From Octopus bimaculoides (Eukaryota): 37,457 bases of DNA. The stretch covers positions 8,133,516-8,170,972 of the forward strand of contig NC_068985.1 of the NCBI RefSeq assembly GCF_001194135.2, given 5' to 3'. This document shows, in pieces, positions 2,895 to 37,457 of the stretch. The stretch's first letter is position 1. Each line of letters starts with the position of its first letter. Under the pieces are notes generated by a model. It was not told the DNA's origin. It saw only the letters and a program-made list of their open reading frames with translations, and did no database searches. The position numbers and the translations under genes were made by a program.

Positions 2895-3056
2895 GCCAAT
2901 TGTGGCCGAGGCACGGCCGTGGCCGTGAGCTAAGAACATAGATTCCGGGCTCAATCCCACCGCACTGCCCCTTGGGCAAGTGTCTTCCACTATAGCCTCG
3001 GGCTGACCCAGATCTGTGAGTGAATTTGATAAACGGGAACTGTGAGAAGCCCGTCG

Positions 3057-3060
<4 letters not shown>
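2895..3060 (+). mobile_element. tRNA-headed SINE family A, decayed copy
   Basis: ccttgggcaagtgtcttccactatagcctcggg...gaagcccgtcgtata matches 28616-28790; followed by (CA)n. Confidence 0.85.
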
Positions 3061-3124
<64 letters not shown>

Positions 3125-3995
3125 NNNNNNNNNNNNNNNNNNNNNNNNNNNNNNNNNNNNNNNNNNNNNNNNNNNNNNNNNNNNNNNNNNNNNNNNNNNN
3201 NNNNNNNNNNNNNNNNNNNNNNNNNNNNNNNNNNNNNNNNNNNNNNNNNNNNNNNNNNNNNNNNNNNNNNNNNNNNNNNNNNNNNNNNNNNNNNNNNNNN
3301 NNNNNNNNNNNNNNNNNNNNNNNNNNNNNNNNNNNNNNNNNNNNNNNNNNNNNNNNNNNNNNNNNNNNNNNNNNNNNNNNNNNNNNNNNNNNNNNNNNNN
3401 NNNNNNNNNNNNNNNNNNNNNNNNNNNNNNNNNNNNNNNNNNNNNNNNNNNNNNNNNNNNNNNNNNNNNNNNNNNNNNNNNNNNNNNNNNNNNNNNNNNN
3501 NNNNNNNNNNNNNNNNNNNNNNNNNNNNNNNNNNNNNNNNNNNNNNNNNNNNNNNNNNNNNNNNNNNNNNNNNNNNNNNNNNNNNNNNNNNNNNNNNNNN
3601 NNNNNNNNNNNNNNNNNNNNNNNNNNNNNNNNNNNNNNNNNNNNNNNNNNNNNNNNNNNNNNNNNNNNNNNNNNNNNNNNNNNNNNNNNNNNNNNNNNNN
3701 NNNNNNNNNNNNNNNNNNNNNNNNNNNNNNNNNNNNNNNNNNNNNNNNNNNNNNNNNNNNNNNNNNNNNNNNNNNNNNNNNNNNNNNNNNNNNNNNACAC
3801 ACATATATATATATATATATAAGCTAAAACATACACAAACAGATATGAACATCAACTGAATGATGAGTTGCCTCCCCTGATTTGCAATATTCGTGCTGGC
3901 GACAAGCTTAATCTATATACGTGGTAATTAATCATCTGAAAATTTAAACACTGCTTTCTTTTTTTACACTTACCCTCCCCACACACACGCACGCC

Positions 3996-4042
<47 letters not shown>

Positions 4043-4164
4043 ACACATATATATATATTGTACATTGAGACCCAAGGTTATATCTATTTATTTGAATCAT
4101 TGTCTCTTATCTGTTCTCTCAGATTTCCCCTTATAGCCACTGTTTACCCTGCTGACTTGGTGTT

Positions 4165-4838
4165 CAGTAAGATATGCGACAAAGTGCAGACGACTTACTG
4201 GATGGGTCCTGGGAACGTTCAGAACCAGAGAGAAGGAAACCACGATGTTCCTCTGGTGGACATTCGCCCTCAGTCGCCTGGATTACTGCTCCCAGCTATG
4301 GTCGCCCAACAGTGTACAATTAACAACGGACCATCGAAGCTTCACAAAGAAGATCGTCTCTTTGCAACAGCTCAGCTACTGGGATAGGCTGAAACAGCTA
4401 AGACTCTGCTCCCTGGATCGAAGGCGGGAGAGGTATGCAGTAATATACATCTGGAAGATCCTGGAAGGGATTGTGCCAAATTTTGGCATTGAAAGCTACA
4501 CAAATACTAGAATGGGTCGCCACTGCCAAAAATCCCAGCAATGCCATCGCGCTTCAGGACTAGTTACTGCAACAGCCTAGGTTTCAAGGGACCAATGGCT
4601 TTTTAATATCCTCCCTAAGAGCCTGAGGGACCTACACAAAGTGGATGTAGGTGCTTTCAAATCAAAACTGGATCTCTTCCTGTCAAGAGTTCCAGATGAA
4701 CCTAGCTCGCGGCAAAAGATGCAAATGAGGGTAGAAACGTCAACCTCCCTCACTCACCAAATTAGGTGGCTCTCAATAATAAGAGCGTAGCAAAATGGCA
4801 GTGCCCCAGCATGGCCACAGCTCTGATCTGAAACTAGA
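4165..4838 (+). mobile_element. CR1/L2-group LINE, 3' fragment (RT C-terminus and 3' tail)
   Basis: Peptide LSRLDYCSQLWSP..SYWDRLKQLRLCSLDRRRERYAVIYIWKILEG; homologous to 12370-13100 on the minus strand; tail gtgccccagcatggccacagctc. Confidence 0.85.
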
Positions 4839-15214: not shown

Positions 15215-15499
15215 CCTTGGCTTAGTGGTTAGGGCTTTCGGCTCACGATCGTGAAGTCGTGAGTTCAATTCCCAGTGACGCGTTGTGTCCTTGAGCAAGA
15301 CACTTTATTTCACGTTGCTCCAGTCCACTCAGCTGGCAAAAATGAGTAGTACCTGTATTTCAAAGGGCCGGCCTTGTCACACTCTGTGTCACGCTGAATC
15401 TCCCTGAGAACTACGAGAAGGGTACATGTGTCTGTGAATTGCTCAGTCACTTGCACGTTAATTTCACGGGACCCTCGTCGTCGTAACTGACGGAGTGCT
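15215..15499 (+). mobile_element. tRNA-headed SINE family C
   Basis: A-box tggcttagtgg and B-box gagttcaattccc, then tccttgagcaagacactt..tccactcagctg core-like segment; colinear with 27371-27688. Confidence 0.9.
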
Positions 15500-15630: not shown

Positions 15631-15675
15631 GTAAAATCTACACCTAGAACTTAAATATTAAACAAGTTGCAGTTG

Positions 15676-15950
15676 AAATAATACATTTTAAAATCTCTCA
15701 GAGAGATTTATGCAGTAGCAGCACGATAAAGTGATAGTATGTTGTCAACTTGATGTGACAGTCCCATGAAAGGGAAGAATGCTACTGTTATTGAGCCCTA
15801 GGAAATACCGTTTCCTGTTGGACTTGACATAAGGACACAGGAAATGTGTCAAGTCCAACAGGAAACGGTGCTTCCTAGGGCTAAATAACAGTAGCATTCT
15901 TCCCTTTCATGGGGTTGTCACATTAAGTTGACAACATACTATCACTTTAT
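15676..15950. mobile_element. Unclassified foldback element, copy E1
   Basis: Arms 15725-15829 and 15847-15951 (105 bp, 6 mismatches), 17-nt apex, small hairpin aaatctctc-a-gagagattt at 15691-15709, 13-bp direct repeat caagttgcagttg at 15663-15675 and 15951-15963. Confidence 0.88.
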
Positions 15951-16403
15951 CAAGTTGCAGTTGGTTTCATACTTCAAAATGGCGAAGAAGAAGCAAAATG
16001 TGATAAAAATGAGAAATCAAATTTGTTTCATGCAAAATTGTAATTTCTGATGATATAAACCAACAAAGTTTTAAAAATAAATAATAACTATAGGAAGAGA
16101 AAAAAGAAGGATTAAAGTCAAGCAAAAAAGAATAAAACCGAATTTGATGTTTCACAAGTTATGACACGTTGTAACAACGAATTTTAAAATGTCTCTTCAT
16201 TTCCCAGTTATGCTGACTTTCAACTCTATGTGTCTTTTGTGTCTTTTCTTTTCTCCTCTAAGACTCTTTCAATTCCCTGTTTTTTAGCACAACACTTCTT
16301 TTCATCTGGTTGTGTTGTTTTTATTTCTTTTGTTTCACTTCAAACGTAAGCCATTCGTTTGAGGATTTGGCTGCTATTGCTCAAAATACTAAATTTCCTG
16401 GGA

Positions 16404-16470
16404 AAGTGTGAATAACAACAACAACAACAACAACAATAACAGCAGCAGCAGCAGCAGCAATAACAACAAT
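16404..16470. repeat. (AAC)n/(AGC)n trinucleotide tract
   Basis: Directly visible. Confidence 0.95.
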
Positions 16471-16479
16471 AAGCAACTG

Positions 16480-17356
16480 TGAGAATAGAAAAATGAATGG
16501 CAGTAGTGAAGACGTATAGCAAAGTGTAAATGTAAATGCATTCTCAGCAAATGAAGCAGAAGTGATAGGAAGAGCTATATCACAAGAATATGGTGATGAC
16601 CAACAAGACATAGTGTGGATGCTGTGCCAATATATTAGAGAAGACCAATATCAAGAACGCCCTAAACTGAGGTACATCGATCGAAGCAAGCTCAAAGTTG
16701 AAACCGAAGAGAGATTCGGTTCCTGGGACTATTCCAGACGAGAAATATAACCGAAACTAACAAGATTACTTGGGCTGCAGCTATTGTTGCTACAGACAGA
16801 GTTGGATACAAAAGAAAAGAAGAAACAGAAGGTAAAGAGCCATACTGGCGAAGATGAATTTGTGAGAAAGAAAGTTACAAAGACATTTGGGACACGTTGA
16901 TAAATTGAGAAGAAGGGAATTGCAGAACGAAAGCATAAGAATAATGCCGGAGAGAATATATAGAGTAAGAAATAAAGGATATGATGTGATATTGGATGAA
17001 TTGAAACAAAGTAGCAATCAAGGCAAAACTGGAAAGATATGACAATAGAAAAAGACAGTTCAGGCAAAACAGGTTGTTTGAAGCAAATCAGAGGAAACTG
17101 TTTTCAGAAACTAGATGGAGAAATACACGGAAAAATGATACCAAATGGAAAGGAAAGCAGAGCATTCTGGAGAGGGATCTGGGATCAATCTGTTGAGCAT
17201 AATGATGAAGCGGAGTGGCTGCATGAACTCCAAGATAGGTTAAGAAATATAGAAGGCCAAGAAGATATAAAGATAACTACAGAAATGATAAAAAAGCAGT
17301 TAAATAAATTATCAAATTGGAAGAGTCAAGGACCGGATGGGGTCGAAGGTTATTGA
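16480..17356 (+). mobile_element. R4/Dong-like non-LTR retrotransposon fragment (pre-RT region)
   Basis: ITETNKITWAAAIV, EPYWRR*I, FWRGIWDQSVEHNDEAEWL and LSNWKSQGPDGVEGY(W) match the pattern of R4-clade proteins upstream of the RT. Confidence 0.75.
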
Positions 17357-18540
17357 ATGAAAGCTCAGGTAGTCTTTAATGGTGAACTGTCTCTTGAATT
17401 TTCGGTGGACAACGGTGTCAAACAGCAAGATATTCTTGTCCCTACGCTTTTCTCTATTTATTTTGCTGCATTGCTTTGGTATGCTTTCAAGGATTGCAAC
17501 AGAGGAATCGGAATTAGATTTCAGACATCTGGTCGTATCTTTTATTTGACCCGGTTTAACTGAAAAGCAAAGCCTTTCAAAATACTTGTTAGAGAATTAC
17601 TTTATGCTGATGATGCTGATTGGCACACTTAGAGGGGGATAGGCAACATTTAATGGACAGATTTTCCACTGCATGTGTATATTTCGGACTTAAAATTAGT
17701 TTGGGGAAAACAAAAGTAATGTTTACTCCCGTACCAGGGCAAACATATTCTGAACCAAACATTTTTATGAATGGAACAAGATTAGAAGTCGTTGACACCT
17801 TTGTTTAGCTAGGAAGCACACTATCAAGAGTTGGTGGTTTTGATGCGGAGATATACTATGGAATACGGAAGGGAAGTGTTGCATTTCGAAATCTCAAAAA
17901 GCGAGTATGGGCAGATAGAAGCATTTCCCTGCAGACAAAAATCAGTGTCTAAAAAGCGTGTGAATTGTCTGCACTTCTTTATTCATGTGAGACATGGTTC
18001 ACTTACAAGCGTTATATAAAAATGCTGGAGAGATTTCATCAAAAGGCCTCAGACGTATTTTAACAGTCAAGTGGGAATGTTTAATACCTGATACTGAGGT
18101 TTTGTGCATGGCACGTTGCAGCTCAATTGAACAACATGTTACCTTGGCTCAAATGAGATGGACTGGACATGTTATTAGAATGAAAGACGTACGTTTGCCA
18201 AAGCGTCTTTTTGATGGTGAGCTCAACTCTGGTAGGCGACCTCAACATAAGCCGAGGAAAAGGCATAAATAATGTGAGAAAGAAAACCCGAAGAAACTAG
18301 ATATGAATAAAAGTGATTGGGAAAATGATGTTCTAGATAGGAACAAGTGGAGAGGTGCTGTTGGGACTGGGTGCAACGCCTGGGAAGAAAAGATGATTCA
18401 ACACTCTGAACTTAAAAGGGCCTGTCGCAAAGGAACAATTGGAACTGTAATCAGCAGTGAACATTGGATATGTATTATATGTGACCGTGTCAAAAGCAGG
18501 ATACGTGAATCATATGAAGTTACATGAAAATGATAATTCC
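17357..18540 (+). mobile_element. RTE-clade LINE, 5'-truncated RT distal half
   Basis: MKAQVVFNGELS.EFSVDNGVKQ, ELLYADD (ttatgctgatgat), GLKISLGKTKVMF, MRWTGHVIRMKDVRLPKRLFDGEL. Confidence 0.9.
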
Positions 18541-18835
18541 CAGATAAGTAATGATCTTGGACAATAACCGCCTCTTACGACTTGTGCAATCAGTCAAGAA
18601 ACTTGTATGACAATATATGAACTTAAAAGACATATATGCTAGTTCACAAATCAGATTCCAAAGGGCAAAGATATAGAAGGAACTTGAATAATATCTGTCA
18701 CTTGTGTTTTAAACCCTGTCAATCAGCAGCTGGTCTTAAAAATCATCTAAGAACTCATCAACGGAGTGATTGTGCTGTGTGATGGGGTGTGGTGTGTATG
18801 CTTATGGGAGGGCTATCATTTGTCAAGATGAAGCA

Positions 18836-18888
<53 letters not shown>

Positions 18889-19449
18889 ATGTATGTATAC
18901 ACACACACATGTATATATATNNNNNNNNNNNNNNNNNNNNNNNNNNNNNNNNNNNNNNNNNNNNNNNNNNNNNNNNNNNNNNNNNNNNNNNNNNNNNNNN
19001 NNNNNNNNNNNNNNNNNNNNNNNNNNNNNNNNNNNNNNNNNNNNNNNNNNNNNNNNNNNNNNNNNNNNNNNNNNNNNNNNNNNNNNNNNNNNNNNNNNNN
19101 NNNNNNNNNNNNNNNNNNNNNNNNNNNNNNNNNNNNNNNNNNNNNNNNNNNNNNNNNNNNNNNNNNNNNNNNNNNNNNNNNNNNNNNNNNNNNNNNNNNN
19201 NNNNNNNNNNNNNNNNNNNNNNNNNNNNNNNNNNNNNNNNNNNNNNNNNNNNNNNNNNNNNNNNNNNNNNNNNNNNNNNNNNNNNNNNNNNNNNNNNNNN
19301 NNNNNNNNNNNNNNNNNNNNNNNNNNNNNNNNNNNNNNNNNNNNNNNNNNNNNNNNNNNNNNNNNNNNNNNNNNNNNNNNNNNNNNNNNNNNNNNNNNNN
19401 NNNNNNNNNNNNNNNNNNNNNNNNNATATATATAATTATTCTCACGTAA

Positions 19450-21265
19450 GTGTATAGTCCTTTTTTCTATCCTTAAGCGACTAACTTACTTTATTTCGGC
19501 TGGTGCTAGCCTCTTTTTTTCTATGTCTAAATGTGTTTTCATGATTAGCTATTCTTTTTATATAAATTTCCGTAGAACCTATATAGTAATAACTTTGTCT
19601 CTTAGATACAACCTTACATCTATATATTATCAGTATTTATATTTATATTATCAATTTTGTTGTTGATATTATGCTTATTCAATCTTCTCAGATTGTATGC
19701 TTGTATGTTTAGATCATAGCGGGGAGTTTCTTAAAGTTATTTCCCTTCCTTCGTTTATCGTGTTACTCATATCACCGTTAATTTTCTCAACAGTTTGGTA
19801 ATTTGATAATTCATTTTTATTTTCTTTATTTCTATTGTTCTGGAAATCATTAAATCTTTTAACATTTTGTTCAGCAACAATTTGTGCTATGTTTTTTGAT
19901 ATGCAAAAACCAGCCCTTAATGTGTGAGAGTTTATTATTTTATGGTATTTATTTTACCTGAAAATGCTTAGAGGCCCCTTTGTACAATAATTTCACTACA
20001 TTAGTTTTAATTTGTTTTGCGAAAGGTATAATGAACCATATTATATCAGCTTTAGAATGATTTTTATGGAGGTTAATGTCATTTATGCATGAAGTGTGAC
20101 TTTTTTTACAGATTTGTTAGGAATATTATCGGTAAGCTTTTCAAATCCTTCCCTTTTGTCGTTAATTGTTCTATTTTGGTTTATATCTATATAGTCATAA
20201 TTATTATAGTGTTTTATTTTCGACTTCATTTTCATCTTATTGTCTTTTATTTTTATTCATTCCTTAATGTTTGTCTTTGTCATTCGTGTTTGATTTATTT
20301 TCGTTTTCTATTTCATGATGTTTTTACTTATATTATTCTTATCGGATTTATATTCTATCCAATCCATATTCTCGTTATTTGTATATTTATTAATTTCTAT
20401 GTTAATATCTTTATTACGAATCGTATTTTGTGTATTGTTCTTATTCTCAGGTTTTACGCTTCGTCTAGAGAATTTTAATTTTTCTTTATATCCAGTGCGA
20501 TATTGTAATAGTCTACATTCTGTCTAAAAATTTCCTCATCTGCAGAGAGATTAGAAATTCTTTTATATTTTCAACTAATTTTTCTGTAATACTTCTTGGA
20601 TGGTTACTATTTTTGTTTATGTACCTTAAATTAGCATTAGTTTATGGTAGGGTTTATATTTACCTGTTTCTAGCTCTAAGTTAACATCCAAGAAGTTGGC
20701 TGAGTTATGTCCCTTTTCCTTTTCATTTGTGATAGATATCCCTATATTTTTGATAAATTTATAGAATCTCTTTTTATATATTTCTGATTTCCTATTAGAG
20801 GGGTTATCAAGGAAGAGTAAAAAAATTGCATCATTCCTGTATAGACCGCCTCCGAGTTCCGGAAATTCCCTATCTAAGTTAAATAATATTTGTATTCCCA
20901 CCAAATCTATAACTTGTGCGAGTCAGCAGATCCCATTGTTATGTCGAAGCTATCATTAGTGTATTTTCTTACCCAGTTTTTATAATCGAATTGCATAATA
21001 GATTTCCCGTCTGCTAATATAACGTTGATTTCGCTCATATTAAGATTTGAATTCTTTTTAGCGAACAAGTGAGCCTTATTTAGTAGTATGGGGTTAATAG
21101 ATAAATAGTAGCTATCGATATCTATTTAGATAAACTTTTTACTATTTTTGTTGTCTATTTTATTTAACCAGTTTAATTCTCCAAGCGAGTTAGACCATAG
21201 TTTTAATTTCAATGAATTCCAAAATCGGCTCTATTCTACCTGTAAGTTCCATAACTAACGAAAAT
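19450..21265 (-). mobile_element. Penelope-like element, RT and decayed 3' region
   Basis: Minus strand reads IDIDSYYLSI..LLNKAHLFAK, FDITMGSADS, GLYRND (YRDD relic) and FLDVNLELETGKYKPYHK, typical of PLE RTs. The 19450-20600 part is much more decayed. Confidence 0.8.
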
Positions 21266-21269
21266 TGGA

Positions 21270-21430
21270 AGTTAAAAACAAACAATAAATGTTAATTATT
21301 AGTAATTCATCTTTGAAGGATATCCCCATTCCATCTAGAAATGAATATTTTTGGAAACTTATTAATAATTTTAAGGATTTTATTACTAGAATTAAATGGA
21401 AAGTCTACTTTAATAATAATTATAATATTA
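21270..21430 (+). mobile_element. Penelope-like ORF N-terminal fragment, inverted relative to the adjacent RT
   Basis: SSLKDIPIPSRNEYFWKLINNFKDFITRIKWKVYF matches the PLE N-terminal pattern SLKNIPIP..Y...LI......I.R.RWK..F. Confidence 0.7.
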
Positions 21431-21689
21431 CTAATAATAATGATGTAGTCGTTTTATTATCTTTATCTTATGATTTTTACTTTGTATTATATTATACTTA
21501 TTTATCGTGCATTTATTCATTATTTTTTCTATATGTGACTGTGGATTTTCATGGATGAGTTCAAGAACTTTGGTTCTTTTCTCTAAAACTATATATTCAT
21601 ATATTTTATACAGTGAAACTTGATTTAATTTTAATTTTTGATAAATTGAATTTAATTGAGTTTTTACCTGTAAATTTGGATTTTTATCC

Positions 21690-21737
21690 CTATTATTATT
21701 ATTATTATTATTGTTATTATTATTATTATTGTTGTTG

Positions 21738-21802
<65 letters not shown>
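21690..21802. repeat. (TAT)n/(TGT)n then (TA)n microsatellite
   Basis: Directly visible. Confidence 0.95.
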
Positions 21803-22488
21803 NNNNNNNNNNNNNNNNNNNNNNNNNNNNNNNNNNNNNNNNNNNNNNNNNNNNNNNNNNNNNNNACGCTCTTCAACAGAAAGAATACGGAGACAATATA
21901 TATATATATATATGGATCAAAATTATTATTATAGCTATGTTTATCCTACATTATATCGGTACAGCTCGGTGCGACCCGCAAAAAGATCATCTCTCCCCCT
22001 CTCTCTCTCTCTATATATATATATATACACACACACACACATATATATATATTTATATATATATGTGTGTGTTTGTGTGTGTGTGTTTGTGTGTGTGCCT
22101 CTATGTATGTAATCACACACACACACACGCACACACGCATACACAGAGACACATACACACCACACATTTCCACGTTGTATTTTAATGTCTTTTTCTAATC
22201 TGAAACATTTCAATTCCACCATGTTTCGTTACTGCACACAAACTGTCACGTTATTGATTTATAACAGTTATTATATATTTATATTTATTTACAGTTATTA
22301 TATATTTATATTTATTTATATTTATTTACAGTATAATTCTTTGGAATGTACAAGTACTTCCAAACATACTAATCTAATCTCTGCAAATAGGTTTTTTAAT
22401 CCTAGACTTTGTGTAAAGCCTTTTGCAAATATCAGAATCCTTGTTATTCATAGATTGAGTTTTTGTCTGCCGTTACGTTCTGAGTTCA

Positions 22489-22845
22489 AATCACTTGTAT
22501 CTTTGTTCATTATAATTGTAATTTTTATTGATTAAAACTTGGTAGGGTGTTTAATATATGAGACCCTTGTTAGTGGGAAAAAAACTTCGGCTGAATTTGA
22601 ACTCAGAACGTAAAGACAGACGAAATACCACTGAGCATTTCACCCAGCGTGCTAACGTTTCTACCAGCTCGTCGCCTTGATGAAAATACATATTGCATAT
22701 TTATTTGATAATAGTATACAGGTGAGAGCACAATTGTGTGATTAAAATGACCTTTTCGCACTAACAAGGGTCTCATATATTAAACACCCCACCAAGTTTT
22801 AATCAATAAAAATTACAATTATAATGAGCAAAAATACAAGTGATT
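22489..22845. repeat. 93-bp inverted repeat pair with 171-bp spacer
   Basis: 22489-22581 versus reverse complement of 22753-22845: 4 mismatches in 93 bp. Confidence 0.92.
22585..22680 (-). mobile_element. tRNA-headed SINE family B, head fragment
   Basis: atttgaactcagaacgtaaagacagacgaaatac..gcgtgctaacg..ccagctcgtcgcctt matches 24090-24174. Confidence 0.85.
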
Positions 22846-23384
22846 AACTTTACTGATAATTCCTTTCAAGGAAGCAAGAGGGATAATTCCGAAATCGAAA
22901 TTGATTTGATACTGAAGGAGAAGAATGTGTTGTAGAATATGGTTGATCTCTGGTAGGTAGAGTAACATATGGCTTGGAGTGATATCTTATGTAACGTTAA
23001 ACCTATGCTGCTACAGTGGTAACAGATTTAATTACAGTGTATTAATTGTGCATTGTCTGCTTTGGAAAGTGAAAAGTAAAGTGCTTTGAGGATATTTGAA
23101 ACCAGATCAGTTTTATGACAAAGCCTTCTGTGTCCAAATCAGTTTCATTGCAATTATTCTGTGGCATTGAAACCACTTTAAGCACTAGTCTACACCTCAT
23201 TTCATTATGATACGTATATTAGTTATATTGCACTCTGACGTCAGACATTAGTAACATGAGCCCATAAAGCAGACTATATGTGGACACTCGACCTGTTGGA
23301 ACGAAATAGCAGCCAAATCTCCTTCAAATCACATTATACCATCTGAGAAAACGACGCGTCGGATGTGGTCCTGAGTTATCTGTT

Positions 23385-23631
23385 AACTTTTATTGGTTTC
23401 AGTCATCAGACTGTGGTCATGCTGGGGCACCGCCTTGAAGAATTTCTGTCGAACGGATCATCCCCCAGTACTTATTGTTCTTTAAAGCTAGGTGCGTATT
23501 CCGTTGGATCTCTTTTTGATAAGCCGCTAAGTTACGAGGACGCAAACAAACCAGCACCGGTTGTTAAGCAGTGGTGGGGGACAAACATGATTGACACAAA
23601 GTTTCGCTCTCTCTCTCTCTCTCTCTCTCTC

Positions 23632-23665
<34 letters not shown>

Positions 23666-23820
23666 ATGACAAGATTCTTTCAGTTTCTGTCCACCAAATC
23701 CACTCACAAGGCTTTGGTCGACCTGGGGCTATAACAGAAGACACTTGCCCAAGGTGCCACGCAGTAGGAATGAACCTGAAACCTTGTGGTTGGAAAGGAA
23801 ACTTCCTACCATACAGCTGC
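23385..23820 (-). mobile_element. SINE family A, near full length with internal (CT)n/(CA)n tract and LINE-like 3' tail
   Basis: Head at 23690-23820 matches 28616-28780; microsatellite at 23605-23670; tail (reverse complement ggtgccccagcatgaccacagtc) matches the CR1/L2-group LINE ends. Confidence 0.85.
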
Positions 23821-23972
23821 GCTTTCACAGCCACGTTGGCACCTGCATTTAGAAAGAAAAAAGTAGTGGTCATGGCCGGGATGCGCTTCATCGTATGTCT
23901 ACATGGGTATTACTGACCCGAAGTAAACAACAACAAAATCAATGATACATCTGTAATATTGTATTCAAATGT

Positions 23973-24174
23973 TGGCACAAGGTCAGCAATTTGGGGGAAG
24001 TCGATTAAATCAATTAAATCGACGCCGGTGCTTGATTGGTATTTATTTTATCGATCTCGAAAGGATGAATAGCGAAGTCGACCCCGGCGGCGTTTGAATC
24101 CAGAACGTGAAGACAGACGAAATACCGCTAAGCATTTGCCCGGCGTGCTAACGATTCTGCTAGCTCACAGCCTT
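23973..24174 (-). mobile_element. SINE family B
   Basis: gaaaggatgaa..gtcgacc.cggcgg..tttgaa.ccagaacgt.aagacagacgaaataccgctaagcattt, shared with 22585-22680 and 27790-27943. Confidence 0.85.
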
Positions 24175-24424
24175 ACACATATGTGATATTACAAGGAATG
24201 CACAAAAGATCTTCTGTGTGGTCGCTCGATTTGCTAGAAATCGCAGGCAAATCGCCATATAGTGCACCTCACCATTAAAAATGGGAAAATATATAGGATA
24301 ATGTAGTCTTGTAAAATACTAAAAAAGGCAGGACGATCACGGCTAGAATGCTTTTGATTATAAATCGTCTAAATGAACCTGAAACTTTATGGTTGGGAAG
24401 GAAACAGCCACGTAGAAAAAATTT

Positions 24425-25135
24425 ATTAGAAGCTTGAGGATCAGCCAGGAAAAGACAAAAGTGCTGCATATCAACAACAAGCAGAAAGAGCCAATCACAG
24501 TCGAGGGGGCACCTGTGGAGGACGTTAGTGAGTTTGTCTATCTTGGAAGCAAGATCAGTAAATCAGGTGGATCAGACGAGGACATCACTGCAAGAGGAAA
24601 GAATGCTTGGCAAGCCTTCGCTATTCTTCGGCTGGTATGGAAGTCCACTGCCGTCTCAACTCGAACTGAACTTCGCTTATTTAGTTTAAACGTAAAATCT
24701 GTGCTTTTGTATGGCTCTGAAACATGGAGAGCCACCTGCAGCAACTACAAGAAGATCCAGACCTTCATCACCAAATGTCTCCGGCAGATCCTCCATCTGA
24801 AGTGGTTCGACAGAGTGCCAAACACCAACCTGTGGGAAAGGGCCAACCAGGAACCCATACATGTTCAGATTAGACGAAGGAAATGGAGATGGATCGGACA
24901 CACACTGCGGAAAGAACCCTCAAATGTGACACGACAAGCACTTGACTGGAACCCGCAGGGAAAAGGAAGCAAGGACGCCCGAAGCAGACATGGAAGCGGA
25001 GGATTTTGGACGAGATCAGGACCACCGGCCTGACATGGGAAGCAGCCAAGAAACACGCCAATGACCGCAAAAAGTGGAAAATAACTGTTGAGGCCCTATG
25101 CTCCACAAGGGGAAAAAAGGATTAAGAAGAAGAAA
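24425..25135 (+). mobile_element. RTE-clade LINE 3' fragment, well preserved, with (AAG)n-like tail
   Basis: ORF 24434-25033: FVYLGS, VKSVLLYGSETW, WRWIGHTLRK, ALDWNPQGK; tail taagaagaagaa near 25123-25135. Confidence 0.92.
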
Positions 25136-25454
25136 TTAAGATTGGCCTAAGGCTTACACGATTACAGTCAGAATCCAACAAATTACGACATTCACGCAAA
25201 ATCGGAATCCAAAACAAGGTTAGATAATATATCGGCAAAATTTAATTTTAAAAGTTTGCAAAAAAATGAAATAATTGTTCAAGGCAAATGCCTTGGTTGA
25301 GAAGCAAGATTTTGCTTCTAATAATGTTTTTTCTCTACGAAGGGTACACTCCGGAAACATCGGTTTTACACACCTCTTGTCAAATTAACTCAATGTAATT
25401 TATTTATGAAGTCTTTTTTAATCGTTATTTTCATTTACAGCAGAATACTAAACA

Positions 25455-26690
25455 CCATTGTCATATATCATCCATCTATCTCGTGGATGACTCTAAATTC
25501 CTGAAGATTGTTGACAGACGAATCTCCAGTCAGACCTGCATGTTGTTATTCGATGGCCGGAAATAAAAAAAAAGAAAGCCCACAATATGTAGTTAAACGA
25601 AAATAAATTTGAATTAGTCCGTAACGGTAAAGGGGCTGCACTTTAGCTATCATTCACTTTTCTTCCGTTAGGCGAAAACGGTGTGTCATCAAACACCGTT
25701 GGAGACCTCGGAGTAAATGTCGACAACTTATGGTGTGTTCACATAAGCAACAAAAAAGACATGGCCCGTAGGGCATGCACTTTGATCCGCAGGACTTTTA
25801 GGTCTAGAGACGGTCCTAACATTATCCTTCGTTTCTCCACCTGCCCCCGTCCCTACTTTGAATACTGTTGACCGCTGTGTTCTCCCGACACAAAACAAAA
25901 CATCACAAACATTGAAATACTCCAGAAATCGATTACAAGGGAAATAGACAATGTGACAGATCTTGATTATTGAGATCGTCTTGAGAAACTCAAACTTTAT
26001 TCTCTCCAACATCATCGTGAGTGCTATATCATTTTTTAGAGTAAAGATTATTTGCCAACGTAACATTGCAGTCCTGGTTTAGGACGAATGTTGCAGTAAT
26101 TTAGCCCCAGGAGACACGATCTGTGTCCTTATATTTTCGAACAAGGACACAGATCGTGTCGTATAGCCAGCTGGAGACGAGGTCTCCTGGGGGCTAAATT
26201 ACAGCAACATTCGTCCTAAACCAGGACTGCCATGTTATGTTGGCAAATAATCTTTACTCTAGCGTACTGTAGCTGAATATCTCTCGTTGAGAGATATACA
26301 AATAGTAATTTTATATCATTTTTATGATGTAGAATATATTCCAACAGCGCTGCCTAAATGATGCAAGTATCAACCTTAAAATCTACCCGAGGCTTGGTCC
26401 CCGTGCTGTCCATCCACTACAAAAGTCATGCTTACGTCACATTACAACACTAAGAGAGAACTGTTTCACCTCAATTGGCCCTGCTCTCTTTCTCATCATG
26501 CCAAGACACATAAGAGAAGGAAAAGATCCGTTAGCAGTCAAACGGTTCCTGGACGAATATCTCCCCAAATTTCTAGATAAACCATCTACATAGGATATAT
26601 TTCTGAAAACAATAAATCTTTACATGAATGCCCAAACAGCGCTTGTCTAGTGAAACATCATTAAATGATTCTTTTTCCATATGGTACTAT
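25455..26690 (+). mobile_element. CR1/L2-group LINE fragment interrupted by foldback element E2
   Basis: LVDDSKFLKI (FADD relic), RRTFRSRD, EYC, LKLYSLQHHRECYIIF|MM*NIF..PRLGPRA once 26037-26323 is removed. Confidence 0.8.
26037..26311. mobile_element. Unclassified foldback element, copy E2 (opposite orientation to E1)
   Basis: Outer arms 26037-26116 and 26182-26261 (3 mismatches, 1 indel); perfect 18-bp inner stem 26113-26130/26143-26160; small hairpin atatctctc-gtt-gagagatat at ~26277-26297; 12-bp TSD tatatcattttt at 26025-26036 and 26312-26323. Confidence 0.92.
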
Positions 26691-27370: not shown

Positions 27371-27688
27371 GGCGCGTGGCTTAGTGGTTAGGCTATTCGG
27401 CTCACGATCTTAATGTCGTGAATTCGATTCCCGGCGGCGCGTTGAATCCTTCAGCAAGATACTTTATTTCACGTTGTTGCAGGACACTCACCAGGCAAAG
27501 ATGAGTAGTACCTGTAATTTAAACGGTCAGTCTTGTCACATTCTTTGTGACGCTGAATCTCCCTGAGAACTACGCAAAGGGAACGCGTGTCTGTGGAGTA
27601 CTCAGCCACTTGCACGTTAATTTCACGAGCAGGCTGTTCCGCTGATTAGATCAACTGGAACATTCATCGTCGTAACCGACGGAGAGCC
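27371..27688 (+). mobile_element. SINE family C, near full length
   Basis: A-box tggcttagtgg, B-box aattcgattccc; colinear with 15215-15499. Confidence 0.9.
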
Positions 27689-27789: not shown

Positions 27790-27943
27790 TTTTCTTCTCT
27801 AGGCACAAGACCCGAAAGTTTTGGGGAGGGGCCAGTCGATTAGATCGACCCCGCTACGCAACTGGTACTTAATTTATCAACCCCGAAAGGATGAAAGCAA
27901 AGTTGACCTCGGCGGAATTTGAACTTAGAACGTAAAGACAGAC
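27790..27943 (-). mobile_element. SINE family B fragment
   Basis: gtcgattagatcgacccc..gaaaggatgaaagcaaagttgacctcggcggaatttgaac matches 23973-24174. Confidence 0.85.
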
Positions 27944-28615
27944 ATCAACAAAATTAAAGAACAACAACAATAACAACAAAAACAGCAACACCACCAGTAG
28001 TAACAACACACAACCAGACTTCATGCAATCGACAGGTTCAGGCGTTCTTCATTAAAAGGGTCGGACACTCCCTATTAGGATGTTAGCGTATATTTTCAAC
28101 TCGTATTTAAATGTATACCTTTGTGGCTGACATCAATCTTGTAATCCGGCAACCCTGTCTGTAACAGTTGTACTTGAGGTGATTTTTCATCCGGAGTTTG
28201 TTGAGCCGGATCCAACCAACGATTTCACCATGTCCGTGACGAATGTTGACCACATCCGACGGTCTGCAGTAGTCGAGGCTGTGATGCATATCTATTTCTG
28301 ATTCCACTGTCGAAGACCATTGACGCGGAGGCCTGATAGTGCTTCCACGTCCGGATAGAATGGACGCCGTATCTGTAGTCGTCATTGGTCCTTGAGATGT
28401 AGGGTTGATGATTGGAGTGTCTGTGGGAATACAAGTTCACATGTGGTCCCCGGTCACATGCATATACGTTTTTGAATAGTATGATCCGTAACAGATTCTC
28501 TTGCAGTCGATTGTCGACCGTCGCTGAGGGTTCGCTGACCAAGTCACCGCCGACTAGCGAATTCTAGAGATATGCTTCGGTAAAAGCCGATGAGTACCTC
28601 ATTCATTTTCGATAT

Positions 28616-28870
28616 AGGCGCAGGAGTGGCTATGCAGTAAGTAGCTTGCTTACCAGCCACATGGTTCCGGGTTCAGTCCCACTGCGTGGCACCTTGGGCA
28701 AGTGTCTTCTACTATAGCCTCGGGCCGACCAATGCCTTGTGAGTCGATTTGGTAGACGGAAACTGAAAGAAGCCCGTCGTATATATGTATATATATATAT
28801 ATTTATATATGTATGTGTGTGTGTATATGTTTGTGCGTCTGTGTTTGTCCCCCCAACATTGCTTGACAAC
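28616..28870 (+). mobile_element. SINE family A, 5' part, cut off at the mariner
   Basis: tRNA-like head aggcgcaggagtggct..ggttcagtccc, body, (TA/TG)n tract, gtttgtccccc..cttgacaaccgg. Confidence 0.9.
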
Positions 28871-30165
28871 CGGAATTTTGCAATATCATCTTATCCACTT
28901 AGTATTACATGTCTTCATTTTTATCGCCTTCAAAGTATTCTTTATTTGAAGCAACGCATCAGTGCAGACGCTTTTTCCACTGTTCGAAGCAGTCCTGGAA
29001 CTCTTGCGAAGTGGTGCCTTTCAATGCCTCCGTCGTTTTTTTTCTTCATTCCTTCTGTATCTGCAAAACGTTTTCCTTTAAGTTCTTTTTTCATTCGGGA
29101 GAACAGAAAAAATCTTGCAGAGAGTAAGATTGAGTGAATAGGGAGAGTGGGTAAGCAGGGTCGTGCCATTGTTAGTCAAAAATTGTCTCACACTCAAGGT
29201 GGTGTGTGCAGGCGCATTGCCATGATGAAACCACCCCTCTCCACTTTGCCACAGGTTGGGGTGTTTTCGTCTCACCTCGTCTCGCAAATGTTTCAGAACT
29301 GCCAAATAAAATGTCTGGTTTCACCAGATGGAACAAATTCTGTGCAGGCAACTCCTTTCGCATCGATGAAGCAAATCAGCATCGTGTTGACATTGGACAT
29401 TATTCGACGCGCTTTTGGGAGGCATAGTGACATTGAATGCTTCCATTGACTTGCTTGCTGATTCTTTCCTGGGTCGTAGCCATAGCACTAGCTTTCGTCA
29501 CCACTGATGACCTTTGGATAAAGGTTCGGATCAACTTCCAGCCGTTCTTTCAGTTCACGACATGCATTCAGCCGTGACTCTTTTTGATCTCTCTTGATCA
29601 AGCGAGGCACAAATATTTTGCTGCAACTTCTCATTCGCAGCCCCTCGCTCAAAATTCGTTGGCAGGAACTCCAGGCCACACCAATCATATCAATAAGTTC
29701 GTCAATCTTTTGGCGACGGTCCTCCAAGATCAGTTCATGAATTTTGATGATATTTTCATTCGTTCGAGAGGTCGACGTTCGTCCTGAATGAGGTTGGTCT
29801 TCAAGCGACAAGTCACCATTCCTAATGTGTGAAAACCACTCGTAAACTTATGTTTCGCCCATGGCAGCGTCCTTGCAAACTGTTAGAAACGTGACAACTG
29901 TTTCAGCCACCGTTTTCCTCAAGCAAAAAAACAGAATTTCACAGAAGTACGCTGTTCCTTCGTTTTAGCCATCTCCAAAATAGACGAACAGGAGAGAAGC
30001 ACTGCAAAATACAGACGCACCTCGTAACAGTACGACTACAAAATCCACGATACCGGTCGGCAGACTGACGCCTGAGGGTCTCATCAAGTGGCTTCAAGCG
30101 GCGAAAGCCTGAACTACAACGGGCTTGTCACGCTGAGAACGTTTCCAGTTACTTTTGGGTGACGT
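28868..30165 (-). mobile_element. mariner (Tc1/mariner) transposon with pseudogenised transposase
   Basis: Transposase relic ~29972 to ~28905 on the minus strand: VYEWF, LEDQPHSGR, VISGDES, WFHHGNAPAHT, HSPYSLNL, MKKELKGKRF. TIR-like ttccagttacttttggg at 30143-30159; only aaccggaa remains at the other end. Confidence 0.92.
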
Positions 30166-35782: not shown

Positions 35783-37116
35783 CAGCAACCTCGGTTCTCT
35801 AACGTCTCACATGTCGAACAAATCGGTTTTCGAACAGAAAATTCGAGATGAAAATGTCTCGGTTATCGAACAAACTTTCGCTTCTCGAATAACGTTGCCG
35901 AACCGAGTTAACCTGAACGGAATCATTTCTGAGTCGATGCCGTGTCGTATACGTTGTGCTGTGCTTTTCTTTTCTAACTTTATTGTACTGTGCCTTTTTT
36001 TCTCTTCCTTAGCCCTTAGTCATGGCTCCAAGGGAAGCTAGTAGTGATACTGGTAAAGGGAAAAGAAAAGTTGAGAGAAAAACAATTGCGGTGAAGAAAG
36101 AAATCATCGCAAAACACGAAAATGGCGTTCGTGTGTCAGATCTCGCTGTACATATAGTACGGTATACCTAAATCGACAATATCTACTATTCTAAAAAAAA
36201 TAGGGAAGTGATAAAAGCAGCTGATATTGCAAAAGGATGGACTATTATTAATAAACAAAGACCAAAGATTCTCGAAGCAGTGGATAAGTTTTTGCTTACT
36301 TTTATAAATGAGAAACAGTTAGCAGGTGACAGTATTAGTGAAGCATTTATTTATGAGAAAGCATTAGAAATGTAAAATAATCTAGTAAAGAAAACTCGTA
36401 CAAGTGCTGAAAGTGAAACTTTTGAATTCAAAGCTAGCAGGCGAGTTCAAACAAGGAAGTGGCTGAGAAATTTGTGATTGAGTTTAGCGATTTGATAAAG
36501 GAAGGAGGTTATCTCCCCCAACAGGTGTTTAACAGGTGTGGATGAAACAGGATTATTTTGGAAACGAATGCCAAATAGAGCCTATATTACTAAGGAGGAA
36601 ATAGCGTTACCAGGACACAAGAGACTCACTCTTTTGCTATGCGGCAACGCAAGTGGCGATTTCGAGGTCAAGCCATTGCTTGTTTACTATTCCGATAATC
36701 CGGGGGGTTTTCAAAAGAAACAATGTTATGAAGAGTAAATTGCCTGTTATGTGGCGGGCTAATACGAAGGCTTGGGTAACCAGACAATTTTGTATTAAGT
36801 GAATTCATGAAGTTTTTGGTCCGAGTGTTAAAAAATACCTGTAAGAAAGAAAAAAACATGTCACTAAAATGCCTTCTCCTGTTAAACGATGCTCCCGCAC
36901 ATCCTCCAGGTTTGGAGGATCACTTAGTTGAAAAGTCCGATTTTATTCAGATCAAATATCTGCCACCTAACATAATTCCTCTGATACAACCAATGGACCA
37001 ACAGGTCGTTGCAAACTTTAAGAAACTTTACACAAAATCCCCGTTTCGAAAGTGTTTTCAAGCCACTAATGACAGTTAATTCTCAGAGAATTTCAGAAAA
37101 ATCATTTCAATATCCT
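35783..37116 (+). mobile_element. Tigger/pogo-like DNA transposon, 3'-truncated, pseudogenised transposase
   Basis: TA followed by cagcaacctcgg terminus; KKEIIAKHENGVRVSDLA (CENP-B-type HTH), DETGLFWKRMP, RLTLLLCGNASG, LLLLNDAPAHP, LPPNI..LIQPMDQQV. Confidence 0.92.
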
Positions 37117-37342
37117 ATACGGGACAGTGCTACTGACATTTATAGCCCCAGGAAAACATCTCTTCCAGCTGGCCAACGCCACACATTCTGTGTCCGATTA
37201 GTATTTGCGAGGGGAGGTCATCGCTCCCATCCGTAGCCTTACGTAATAGATACATGGACTCGAGTTTCTGGGTGGTTACCCGTTCTCAGCGTGTATTAAT
37301 CACCAGCTAGTGATGAAAACTCACCCCAATCGCAAAATACTA
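37113..37342. mobile_element. Partial third member (E3) of the foldback family, with a longer interior
   Basis: gtgctactgacatttatagccccaggaaaacatctcttccagctgg..ctgtgtcc aligns with the E1/E2 arm; an imperfect inverted pair follows at 37199-37225 and 37309-37342. Confidence 0.65.
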
Positions 37343-37457
37343 TATGTTCTTTCCAGCGATGAACCATCGCTGATCTCGGAAAAGGAGAAAGAAGCTATAT
37401 TAAATCTCTGAGCAAGATGTAATAGTAGCAATACGGAATCGTAACATATATATATAT

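What the first reader, a model, noticed from the sequence alone, without database searches (positions are those of the whole stretch)
15663..26323. Unnamed asymmetric foldback element family whose two arms co-evolve (E1 15676-15950, E2 26037-26311)
Seen: E1 and the reverse complement of E2 are homologous end to end. They share an unpaired ~50-nt terminus (aaat..attt..atctctca..gagagat..cag.ta.cag.ac), an arm (ttg.caac..gcagtcc..gaatg.t.ctgt.att.agccc.agga..cgt.tcc.g.tgg) and an apex motif AAGGACACAG/CTGTGTCCTT. The hairpin stops within 2 nt of the same position in both copies. Hand alignment gives about 61/96 (~64%) identity between copies, but 99/105 and ~95% complementarity between arms within a copy, so roughly 30 differences are mirrored in both arms. 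Established: cut-and-paste elements have inverted repeats at both termini and short fixed TSDs (2-11 bp). Helentron/HINE elements have subterminal inverted repeats plus a small terminal hairpin but insert at TT without long TSDs. TSDs of 12-13 bp and variable length are typical of target-primed reverse transcription. This element mixes those signatures and shows no poly-A or simple-repeat tail. Inference: a non-autonomous element whose second arm is re-templated from the first during mobilisation (foldback self-priming) or homogenised by conversion, moved by an unidentified enzyme.
Basis: partly seen in the sequence, partly recalled or inferred. Interest (0 to 1): 0.88.

Follow-up and report, generated by a model that had tools for sequence, protein, structure and literature searches.

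The report
Penelope-type inverted retroelement insertions in octopus
The two "foldback elements" are real mobile-element insertions in the Octopus bimaculoides genome, but their odd shape is the known insertion signature of Penelope-like retroelements and their small ribozyme-carrying dependants, not a new class of element.

Summary
E1 (15676-15950) and E2 (26037-26311) are each 275 nt, flanked by perfect 13-bp and 12-bp target duplications. Each is a long hairpin plus a 50-nt unpaired tail holding a 7-bp mini-hairpin. They are homologous (57-63% identity, z about 11) and carry 24 mirrored differences.

The interpretation needs revising. The same family exists as a linear unit of about 335 nt: window 37062-37394, and a three-unit tandem/inverted array in another O. 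bimaculoides locus, L006 3606-4353, inside a (TA)n microsatellite. This long unit carries a type-I hammerhead ribozyme motif.

Each "hairpin" is two 5'-truncated copies of the unit's 3' part joined head to head. All copies start at one of two fixed sites 49-50 nt apart, and the tail is the stretch between them. Truncation points differ between copies (106 to 240 nt) and cluster at a small palindrome.

Variable target duplications, an adjacent inverted 5'-truncated copy, a one-sided tail, a palindrome at the junction, partial tandems, a hammerhead and a microsatellite target are the published hallmarks of Penelope-like element (PLE) insertions and non-LTR retrozymes.

Both arms are copied from one template at insertion, so no arm co-evolution is needed. 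Verdict: a new member of a known kind. The autonomous partner was not identified.

The parts
15663..15675 (.). E1 target-site duplication, left copy (CAAGTTGCAGTTG)
   Evidence: 13/13 identical to 15951-15963
15676..15725 (-). E1 'tail': the 3'-terminal 50 nt of copy 1, lying between the two reverse-transcription start sites. Contains the mini-hairpin 15693-15707.
   Evidence: Unpaired in the fold. Homologous to the E2 tail and to the L006 tails.
15726..15829 (-). E1 copy 1 body: 5'-truncated copy of the unit's 3' part, unit positions 1-106 counted from the inner start site
   Evidence: nhmmer with L006 unit C: unit 134-287 matches 15830-15677 on the minus strand, E = 3e-23. Truncation point.
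15830..15950 (+). E1 copy 2: inverted, tail-less, 5'-truncated copy (unit positions 1-123). Its first 17 nt (15830-15846) form the hairpin 'loop'.
   Evidence: unit C 113-242 matches 15825-15952 on the plus strand, E = 1.4e-22..
15951..15963 (.). E1 target-site duplication, right copy
26025..26036 (.). E2 target-site duplication (TATATCATTTTT), left copy
   Evidence: 12/12 identical to 26312-26323
26037..26142 (-). E2 copy 2: inverted, tail-less, 5'-truncated copy. Includes the 12-nt 'loop' 26131-26142 and has lost 22 nt that are present in copy 1 and in the linear relative.
26143..26261 (+). E2 copy 1 body (unit positions about 1-122), with the 22-nt segment 26161-26182
   Evidence: unit C 115-279 matches 26139-26303 on the plus strand, E = 2.6e-7..
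26262..26311 (+). E2 tail (50 nt) with mini-hairpin 26279-26295
26312..26323 (.). E2 target-site duplication, right copy
37062..37394 (-). S3: full-length linear member of the family (333 nt) with no inverted partner. A degenerate hammerhead-like motif lies at 37249-37297, and the tail has a compensated mini-palindrome at 37078-37092. It interrupts a pogo/Tigger-like ORF.
   Evidence: A profile built from E1 and E2 only hits 37119-37195 at E = 4e-5. L006 unit C hits 37311-37113 at E = 2.7e-6. Collinear alignment over the whole unit.
37395..37443 (-). T4: tail plus linker of a further, very short copy placed head-to-tail with S3 (partial tandem), followed by (TA)n to the end of the window. Tentative.
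   Evidence: Best non-self hit of the tail profiles, but weak (E 0.2-0.8). The junction sequence is homologous to the A-to-B tandem junction in L006.
19448..21558 (.). Context, not a proven partner. Two copies of a reverse-transcriptase plus GIY-YIG-like element lie head to head: the minus copy at 21215-19448 and the plus-strand N-terminal piece at 21289-21558. Both run into the two assembly gaps.
   Evidence: tblastn with P0325 and P0329. The predicted fold matches reverse transcriptases, including telomerase RT. GIY-YIG is only sub-threshold in Pfam.

Best explanation
E1 and E2 are insertions of a non-autonomous Octopus bimaculoides retroelement. Its full unit is about 335 nt and carries a type-I hammerhead ribozyme motif. 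That makes it a non-LTR 'retrozyme'-like element of the kind thought to be moved by Penelope-like elements (PLEs).

Shown:
- Each 'hairpin' is two 5'-truncated copies of the unit's 3' part joined head to head.
- Every copy begins at one of two fixed positions 49-50 nt apart.
- The copy started at the outer position carries the 50-nt tail; the copy started at the inner position does not.
- The 5' ends differ in every copy and cluster at a small palindrome (GACAC..GTGTC).

Inferred from published PLE biochemistry:
- The element-encoded RT/GIY-YIG protein cuts both target strands with a variable stagger, which gives the 12- or 13-bp duplication.
- It primes reverse transcription from both 3' ends, at the internal start sites of a multimeric RNA.
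- Both cDNAs stop near the palindrome, and one is completed by copying the other.

Because both arms are copied from the same source at one moment, they are near-identical within a copy. Copies from long-diverged source units differ by about 40%. The 3-6 arm mismatches are decay since insertion.
For: 1. Linear and longer relatives exist.
- S3 in the window.
- In L006 (O. bimaculoides chromosome CM046609.1), units A, B and C at 3606-4353. A and C are 240-nt inverted copies, 95% complementary. A and B are direct repeats in tandem, 96% identical. B and C form a pair built like E1, but with partners of 134 and 240 nt.

2. Fixed outer ends and variable inner ends. The truncation points are 106, 123, about 122, about 128, 134, 240 and 297. 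Tails are 0, 1 or 2 per insertion and 35-50 nt long.

3. Hammerhead motif. A descriptor scan gives one hit in 133.6 kb (both strands scanned) and none in 30 shuffles. The hit lies inside L006 unit C (4095-4137). At the homologous place, S3 has different but still complementary helix I and helix II sequences and a palindromic loop III (read from the sequence).

4. Other family traits. The L006 array sits in (TA)n. Units have 39-44% G+C and no ORF.

5. Published PLE and retrozyme features match.
- Variable duplication, an inverted 5'-truncated copy at the 5' end, and a 30-40 bp tail often at only one end (PMC8557442).
- A 31-bp tail on one of two inverted pLTRs, and palindromes at the inverted junction (PMC3846280).
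- Both strands cleaved and extended, and two internal RT start sites with the tail lying between them (PMC11167929).
- Retrozymes of about 300 bp in tandem, with low G+C and duplications longer than 4 bp (PMC7229834).

6. A candidate enzyme type is present. An RT plus GIY-YIG-like element lies between E1 and E2, itself as a head-to-head pair.
Against: - No autonomous PLE with a matching 3' end was found. The RT/GIY-YIG copies at hand show no nucleotide similarity to the family's 3' region.
- Rfam's hammerhead models do not score the motif, even at E <= 10.
- Only one of three long units has an intact catalytic core: unit A has CTGGTGA and S3 has CTGAGAA.
- The tail is 49-50 nt in E1 and E2, longer than the published 30-40 bp.
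- The sample is small: only seven copies from four insertion events could be examined. No copy was seen in about 110 kb of O. sinensis and O. vulgaris sequence.
- The RT element gets no Pfam RVT_1 hit, and its GIY-YIG hit is below the curated cut-off.
Confidence: 0.78

Rival explanations
1. Heritable foldback element. The hairpin itself is the transposing unit. Its second arm is regenerated from the first in each cycle by self-primed foldback synthesis, or kept paired by selection, and an unknown enzyme moves it.
For: - The arms cluster by copy, with 24 mirrored differences.
- The tail-side boundary is the same in E1 and E2.
- The literature on PLEs has itself considered self-priming at palindromes (PMC3846280).
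Against: - Linear members and an inverted pair with very unequal partners (134 versus 240 nt) exist.
- Apex positions differ between E1 and E2.
- The loop is in the orientation of the tail-less copy in both elements, which foldback of the tailed strand does not give.
- The fixed boundary is explained by a fixed RT start site.
Confidence: 0.1
2. A tRNA- or LINE-dependent SINE whose 5' part was inverted by twin priming during LINE-type target-primed reverse transcription.
For: - Target duplications are variable in length.
- A conserved stem-loop lies near the 3' end.
- LINE fragments (RTE and CR1/L2-like) are abundant in the window.
Against: - No tRNA-like head was found by ARAGORN or Rfam.
- Twin priming joins adjacent parts of the RNA, not fully overlapping ones.
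- A one-sided tail and two discrete start sites are not LINE features (PMC8557442).
- The hammerhead motif and the tandem arrangement point elsewhere.
Confidence: 0.05
3. Arms kept alike after insertion by gene conversion or template switching between the two arms of a palindrome.
For: Short-spacer palindromes are known to undergo intrastrand exchange. The arms are 94-97% alike while the copies are about 60% alike.
Against: - Each copy keeps private one-arm substitutions and indels, including an unrepaired 22-nt deletion.
- The perfect duplications fit a young age.
- Divergence between copies is explained by different source units: L006 units are close to E1 and far from E2 and S3.
Confidence: 0.04
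4. A miniature inverted-repeat or foldback DNA transposon (cut-and-paste), or a Helitron/Helentron derivative.
For: Long inverted repeats, small size and a small subterminal hairpin.
Against: - The ends are asymmetric, with a tail on one side only.
- The duplication is 12 bp in one case and 13 bp in the other.
- Linear and tandem relatives exist without inverted repeats.
- Helitrons make no duplication.
Confidence: 0.02

Closest known systems
Penelope-like element insertions with an inverted pLTR and a one-sided 'tail' (for example Pen2a_Av of Adineta vaga; Naiad, Penelope and Poseidon elements)
   Same: - Head-to-head inverted 5'-truncated copy.
- An optional tail at the outer end of only one of the inverted repeats.
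- A palindrome at the inverted junction.
- Partial tandems.
- Length-variable duplications.
- A microsatellite/(TA)n target.
- A hammerhead motif upstream of the start sites.
   Different: - No ORF lies between the repeats; these are solo pairs of 104-121 nt.
- The tail is 49-50 nt in E1 and E2 (35 and 48 nt in L006), against the published 30-40 bp.
- No autonomous element with the same terminal sequence was found.
Metazoan non-LTR retrozymes (Cervera and de la Pena 2020): coral, mussel and axolotl families
   Same: - Non-coding unit of about 335 nt with low G+C.
- A type-I hammerhead with a short helix III and a palindromic loop.
- Tandem arrangement.
- Duplications longer than 4 bp.
- Co-occurrence with PLE-like elements.
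   Different: - Here most copies seen are dispersed, truncated and inverted pairs rather than long tandem arrays.
- Circular RNA and self-cleavage are untested.
- The motif is not scored by Rfam.
- In my searches of the held papers, the mentions of octopus and cephalopods I read concerned Naiad elements, and none described a retrozyme family in cephalopods.
5' inversions of human L1 by twin priming
   Same: Both target strands prime cDNA synthesis, giving an inverted 5' segment within one pair of duplications.
   Different: - In L1 the two segments come from adjacent, non-overlapping parts of the RNA.
- In L1 the second priming site is not fixed.
- Here both cDNAs copy the same stretch from fixed start sites.
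Foldback elements and palindromic MITEs
   Same: The overall hairpin shape and small size.
   Different: Those have symmetric ends, a fixed short duplication and DNA-mediated movement.

Membership tests
PLE-type insertion (pLTR-derived or PLE-dependent element) | Target-site duplication of variable length | tested here: met
   13 bp for E1 and 12 bp for E2, both perfect. The L006 array lies in (TA)n, so its duplication cannot be read.
PLE-type insertion (pLTR-derived or PLE-dependent element) | An inverted 5'-truncated copy adjacent at the 5' end (head to head) | tested here: met
   Seen in E1, E2, and L006 B/C and A/C.
PLE-type insertion (pLTR-derived or PLE-dependent element) | An optional tail extension (30-40 bp), often at one end only, bounded by two RT start sites | tested here: met
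   One tail of 50 nt in each of E1 and E2, tails of 35 and 48 nt in L006 B and C, and none in L006 A. The outer and inner ends coincide between insertions. The length is somewhat above the published range.
PLE-type insertion (pLTR-derived or PLE-dependent element) | Partial tandem copies (pseudo-LTR arrangement) | tested here: met
   L006 B followed by A, with direct repeats 96% identical. S3 preceded by T4 in the window, which is tentative.
PLE-type insertion (pLTR-derived or PLE-dependent element) | ORF with a TERT-like RT and a GIY-YIG endonuclease, or sequence shared with such an element | tested here: not met
   The family has no ORF. It shows no similarity to the ends of the RT/GIY-YIG-like copies at hand. 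It is therefore filed as a dependant, not as a PLE proper.
Non-LTR retrozyme | Type-I hammerhead ribozyme in the unit | tested here: inconclusive
   The descriptor gives one hit in 133.6 kb, none in shuffles, and the hit is inside unit C. Helices I and II covary between unit C and S3. Against this, Rfam finds no hit, and two of three cores are mutated.
Non-LTR retrozyme | Short (150-450 bp) non-coding unit, low G+C, tandem copies | tested here: met
   The unit is 333-345 nt with 39-44% G+C. Only dimer-level tandems were seen.
Non-LTR retrozyme | Expression as self-cleaved linear and circular RNA | not testable with these tools
   No octopus RNA data could be searched by nucleotide sequence.
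tRNA-derived SINE | A 5' tRNA-related head with A and B boxes | tested here: not met
   ARAGORN found none. Rfam at E <= 10 found none in S3. The apparent 'B box' is the palindromic helix III loop of the hammerhead-like motif.
MITE / foldback DNA transposon | Symmetric terminal inverted repeats and a fixed short duplication | tested here: not met
   The 50-nt tail is on one side only, and the duplications are 12 and 13 bp.
Helitron / Helentron non-autonomous element | No target duplication; insertion at AT or TT; a 3' hairpin followed by CTRR | tested here: not met
   Perfect 12- and 13-bp duplications, and the ends read ...TATTATTT and ...CTTTAT.

The most novel reading that the evidence does not exclude
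These short head-to-head pairs may be natural in-vivo footprints of dual-strand priming by a PLE-type enzyme that uses two start sites 50 nt apart on a ribozyme-bearing multimeric RNA. The enzyme could be the RT plus GIY-YIG-like family found next to them, which Pfam's RVT_1 model does not detect. If so, it would be an undescribed or poorly described PLE lineage in cephalopods with its own retrozyme. The near-perfect 100-bp hairpins it scatters through introns could also feed small-RNA pathways.
Probability: 0.25. Interest if true: 0.5.

Novelty: new member of a known kind. Interest (0 to 1): 0.35.

Why it matters
It removes an apparent anomaly. The 'asymmetric co-evolving foldback' is what PLE-type integration leaves behind when both cDNAs are very short.

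It has modest positive value in three ways:
- The copies give a clean genomic read-out of two discrete reverse-transcription start sites and of both-strand priming. These are features so far shown in vitro for one lizard PLE.
- They indicate a hammerhead-bearing retrozyme-like family in octopus.
- They are a practical warning for repeat annotation, because such pairs will be called as unknown MITEs or microRNA-like hairpins.

Tried and rejected
1. tRNA-derived SINE with a 5' inversion. I read A- and B-box-like strings in S3, but ARAGORN and Rfam found nothing. The 'B box' turned out to be the palindromic loop of the hammerhead-like motif.

2. Simple snap-back of the tailed cDNA. Rejected because in both elements the loop is in the orientation of the tail-less copy.

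3. Getting more copies.
- The RTE and mariner protein searches returned no octopus contigs.
- Two metagenome loci had no copy.
- A 22-base arm motif found nothing in the metagenome contigs.
- Rhodopsin loci of three Octopus species had no copy.
- Success came only through homologues of the RT-like ORF 20626-20904.
- Further loci L009-L012 had none.

4. Rfam. Nothing reached gathering score in the window. E1 gave only generic microRNA-precursor hits far below threshold. There was no hammerhead hit in L006.

5. Target similarity to the element's linker. Matches of 7/14 and 3/14 are chance level (read from the sequence).

6. Shared 3' end with the RT/GIY-YIG copies. Scores were at the shuffle level.

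7. Classifying that RT element by Pfam or PDB sequence search. There were no hits except a sub-threshold GIY-YIG match. Only the fold comparison gave reverse transcriptases.

8. The inverted repeat at 22489-22845 as a second example of the same process. Its structure is not explained and no duplication was found.

Full report
**Source and observation.** The window is Octopus bimaculoides draft sequence: an RTE fragment at 24434-25033 is 100% identical to UniRef A0A0L8HA18_OCTBM. It is 38.5% G+C and has 13 N runs.

E1 (15676-15950) and E2 (26037-26311, opposite strand) are each exactly 275 nt between perfect direct repeats of 13 bp and 12 bp. As single strands they fold at -121.7 and -108.2 kcal/mol, with z of -28 and -23. 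Each has a 50-nt unpaired end with a 7-bp mini-hairpin, then two arms.
- E1: 104-nt arms, 6 mismatches, 17-nt loop.
- E2: 3 mismatches, a 1-nt indel, and a 22-nt piece present in one arm only.

E1 and E2 are 57-63% identical, and tail plus arm scores z = 11.5 against shuffles. Of 84 columns where all four arms align, 24 differ between copies but agree within each copy.

The two N runs named by the scan's program lie between the elements, kilobases from either.

**Known libraries.** Rfam finds nothing at gathering score. At relaxed thresholds E1 only resembles long plant microRNA precursors far below their cut-offs, which is a shape effect. ARAGORN finds no tRNA.

**A linear relative in the window.** A profile made from E1 and E2 alone hits 37119-37195 at E = 4e-5. 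That stretch has no inverted partner.

It is preceded by a tail-like stretch whose mini-palindrome is compensated (AATTCTC-A-GAGAATT). It continues for about 200 nt beyond the point where E1 and E2 fold back. I first read this continuation as a tRNA-like SINE head, but that did not survive testing.

**Getting more octopus DNA.** Protein searches with RTE and mariner ORFs gave no octopus contigs. A motif scan of metagenome contigs gave nothing. Rhodopsin loci of O. vulgaris, O. bimaculoides and O. sinensis (L003-L005) hold no copy.

The route that worked was the degenerate RT-like ORF 20626-20904. Its relatives include RefSeq proteins of O. bimaculoides and O. sinensis. The locus of one of them, L006 on chromosome CM046609.1, holds a strong family match (E down to 1e-24).

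**The L006 array (3606-4353).** It sits inside a (TA)n microsatellite and has three units.
- Unit A: 3606-3902, tail-less, at least 240 nt and collinear to 297.
- Unit B: a 35-nt tail (3907-3941), then 127 nt.
- Unit C: 4066-4305 plus a 48-nt tail to 4353, in the opposite orientation.

A and C are 240-nt inverted repeats, 95% complementary. A and B are direct repeats, 96% identical, arranged head to tail. B and C form a pair like E1, but with partners of 134 and 240 nt.

Using unit C as the query:
- E1 is hit on both strands (E = 3e-23 and 1.4e-22).
- E2 is hit at 2.6e-7.
- The window's linear copy is hit over unit positions 12-202 at 2.7e-6.

A three-way alignment shows that copy (S3, 37062-37394) to be a complete unit of 333 nt. 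It is collinear with the L006 units, including the sequence that precedes the next tail in the tandem. At 37395-37443 a further tail plus linker follows S3 head to tail and then runs into (TA)n. This partial tandem is only weakly supported statistically.

**Anatomy that follows.** I call the strand with the tail at its 3' end the sense strand. On it, every copy ends at one of two places:
- the outer site, ...TATTATTT (E1, E2, L006 C);
- the inner site 49-50 nt upstream, ...CTTTAT or ...CTCTA (the second copies of E1 and E2, and L006 A).

The tail is the stretch between these sites.

The 5' ends are all different: unit positions 106 and 123 in E1, about 122 and 128 in E2, 134 in L006 B, 240 in C, and 297 in A and S3. 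The short ones cluster at a small palindrome, GACAC(N4-5)GTGTC.

In both E1 and E2 the 'loop' is simply the extra 17 or 12 nt by which the tail-less copy is longer than the tailed one. So the hairpin is not a unit of inheritance. It is two independently truncated copies joined head to head within one pair of target duplications.

**Hammerhead motif.** On the sense strand of unit C I read:

TCCAGA-CTGATGA-TGAG-CAAAGA-CTCA-GAAA-TATG-TC-TCTGGA

The parts are helix I, the core, helix II, GAAA, a short helix III with a four-base loop, the cleavage site, and helix I again.

A descriptor scan of 133.6 kb of octopus sequence on both strands finds this one site and nothing else. It finds nothing in 30 shuffles.
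- Unit A has the same motif with CTGGTGA and a CATG loop.
- S3 has, at the homologous place, ATACACG-CTGAGAA-C-GGGT-AACC-ACCC-A-GAAA-CTCGAG-TC-CATGTAT. Helices I and II have different sequences that still pair, loop III is palindromic, and the core is mutated (read from the sequence).

Rfam's hammerhead models do not report any of these. I therefore count this feature as likely but not proven. Units are 39-44% G+C and have no ORF.

**Comparison with what is published.**
- Craig et al. [quoted passage not shown] They have a 30-40 bp tail often present at only one end, duplications of variable length, and a bias for microsatellites.
- Arkhipova et al. [quoted passage not shown]
- Frangieh et al. 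2024 (PMC11167929): a purified PLE protein cleaves and extends both target strands and starts reverse transcription at two internal sites of the RNA. The tail is the sequence between them.
- Cervera and de la Pena 2014 and 2020 (PMC4209133, PMC7229834): type-I hammerheads with short helix III and palindromic loops occur in PLE repeats and in tandem 'non-LTR retrozymes' of about 300 bp. These have low G+C and duplications longer than 4 bp.
- A 2026 preprint argues that retrozymes are non-autonomous PLE derivatives.

E1 and E2 match this list feature by feature.

**Mechanism.** Shown: two start sites, variable truncation, head-to-head joining, and variable duplication.

Inferred from the cited biochemistry:
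- Both target strands are nicked with a 12-13 bp stagger.
- Each 3' end primes cDNA synthesis on a multimeric unit RNA, one at the outer site and one at the inner site.
- Both stop near the palindrome.
- The tailed cDNA is completed by copying the other one to its end, which places the loop in the tail-less copy's orientation.

The arms of one insertion are thus copies of one source. E1 (close to the L006 units) and E2 come from sources about 40% apart. No co-evolution or conversion is required. The few one-arm differences and the 22-nt deletion are later decay.

**Candidate enzyme type.** Between E1 and E2, and bounded by the two assembly gaps, lie two copies of an element head to head.
- A minus-strand copy covers residues of about 222-740 of relatives P0325 and P0329 (21215-19448).
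- A plus-strand N-terminal piece lies at 21289-21558, about 70 nt away.

Full-length relatives show a YRDD motif and a C-terminal Cys-rich linker with a 'VVY...YVGSS..FK.RF..H' stretch.

Library tests of these relatives gave little:
- Pfam gives no RVT_1 hit, and GIY-YIG only at E = 0.005-0.012, below its cut-off.
- PDB sequence searches are empty.
- An AlphaFold model (mean pLDDT 60.5, with a core of 80-90) matches reverse transcriptases including telomerase RT (E down to 1.4e-6).

This is PLE-like in architecture and in its inverted arrangement. However, its ends show no similarity to the E family, so it is not shown to be the partner.

**Limits.**
- Only four insertion events (seven copies) could be studied.
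- The partner is unknown.
- The ribozyme is not validated.
- No copy was seen in about 110 kb of O. sinensis and O. vulgaris sequence, which is too little to say the family is absent there.

**Verdict.** The thing itself is a new octopus member of a known kind, with moderate-to-low interest.

Noticed in passing
window 22462-22845: A 93-nt inverted repeat (22489-22581 and 22753-22845, 96% complementary). Its 171-nt spacer holds an antisense tRNA-like SINE head. A 27-nt sense piece of the same head abuts the left arm. No target duplication was found and the structure is unexplained.
   Followed up: partly
window 19448-21558, flanked by gaps 18921-19425 and 21803-21865: Two copies of an RT plus GIY-YIG-like element lie head to head. 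Pfam RVT_1 does not detect the protein family, but a predicted model matches reverse transcriptases. Both assembly gaps sit at the outer ends of this pair, as expected for repeats that short reads assemble badly. The same element occurs twice in L006 (9827-11778 and 17597-20211).
   Followed up: partly
window 36807-37079: A pogo/Tigger-like DDE transposase ORF is cut short by the S3 unit. A mariner-like copy with stop codons but no frameshifts lies at about 28900-30000 on the minus strand.
   Followed up: no
window 24010-24185, 27836-27962, 22585-22680: Three copies of a tRNA-like SINE family on the minus strand (B-box-like GTTCTGAGTTCAAAT). Separately, CORE-like SINE copies at 2943-3060 and 28665-28783 are each followed by (CA)n.
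   Followed up: no
window 15218-15468 and 27377-27627: A 251-nt direct repeat, 84% identical, of unknown family. One copy lies 200 nt from E1 and the other 1 kb from E2. This is probably coincidence.
   Followed up: no
L003 4498-4524, L005 4428-4454, L004 5577-5621: A weak match (E about 0.1) to the arm motif CCTGGGGCTAAAT lies at the orthologous place upstream of rhodopsin in three Octopus species. It is either chance or a very old relic.
   Followed up: no
L006 3907-3941 versus 4306-4353: The two tails of one array differ. Unit B lacks the 13-nt linker between the mini-hairpin and the arm, so its tail is 35 nt rather than 48 nt. This could be a deletion or a third start site.
   Followed up: no
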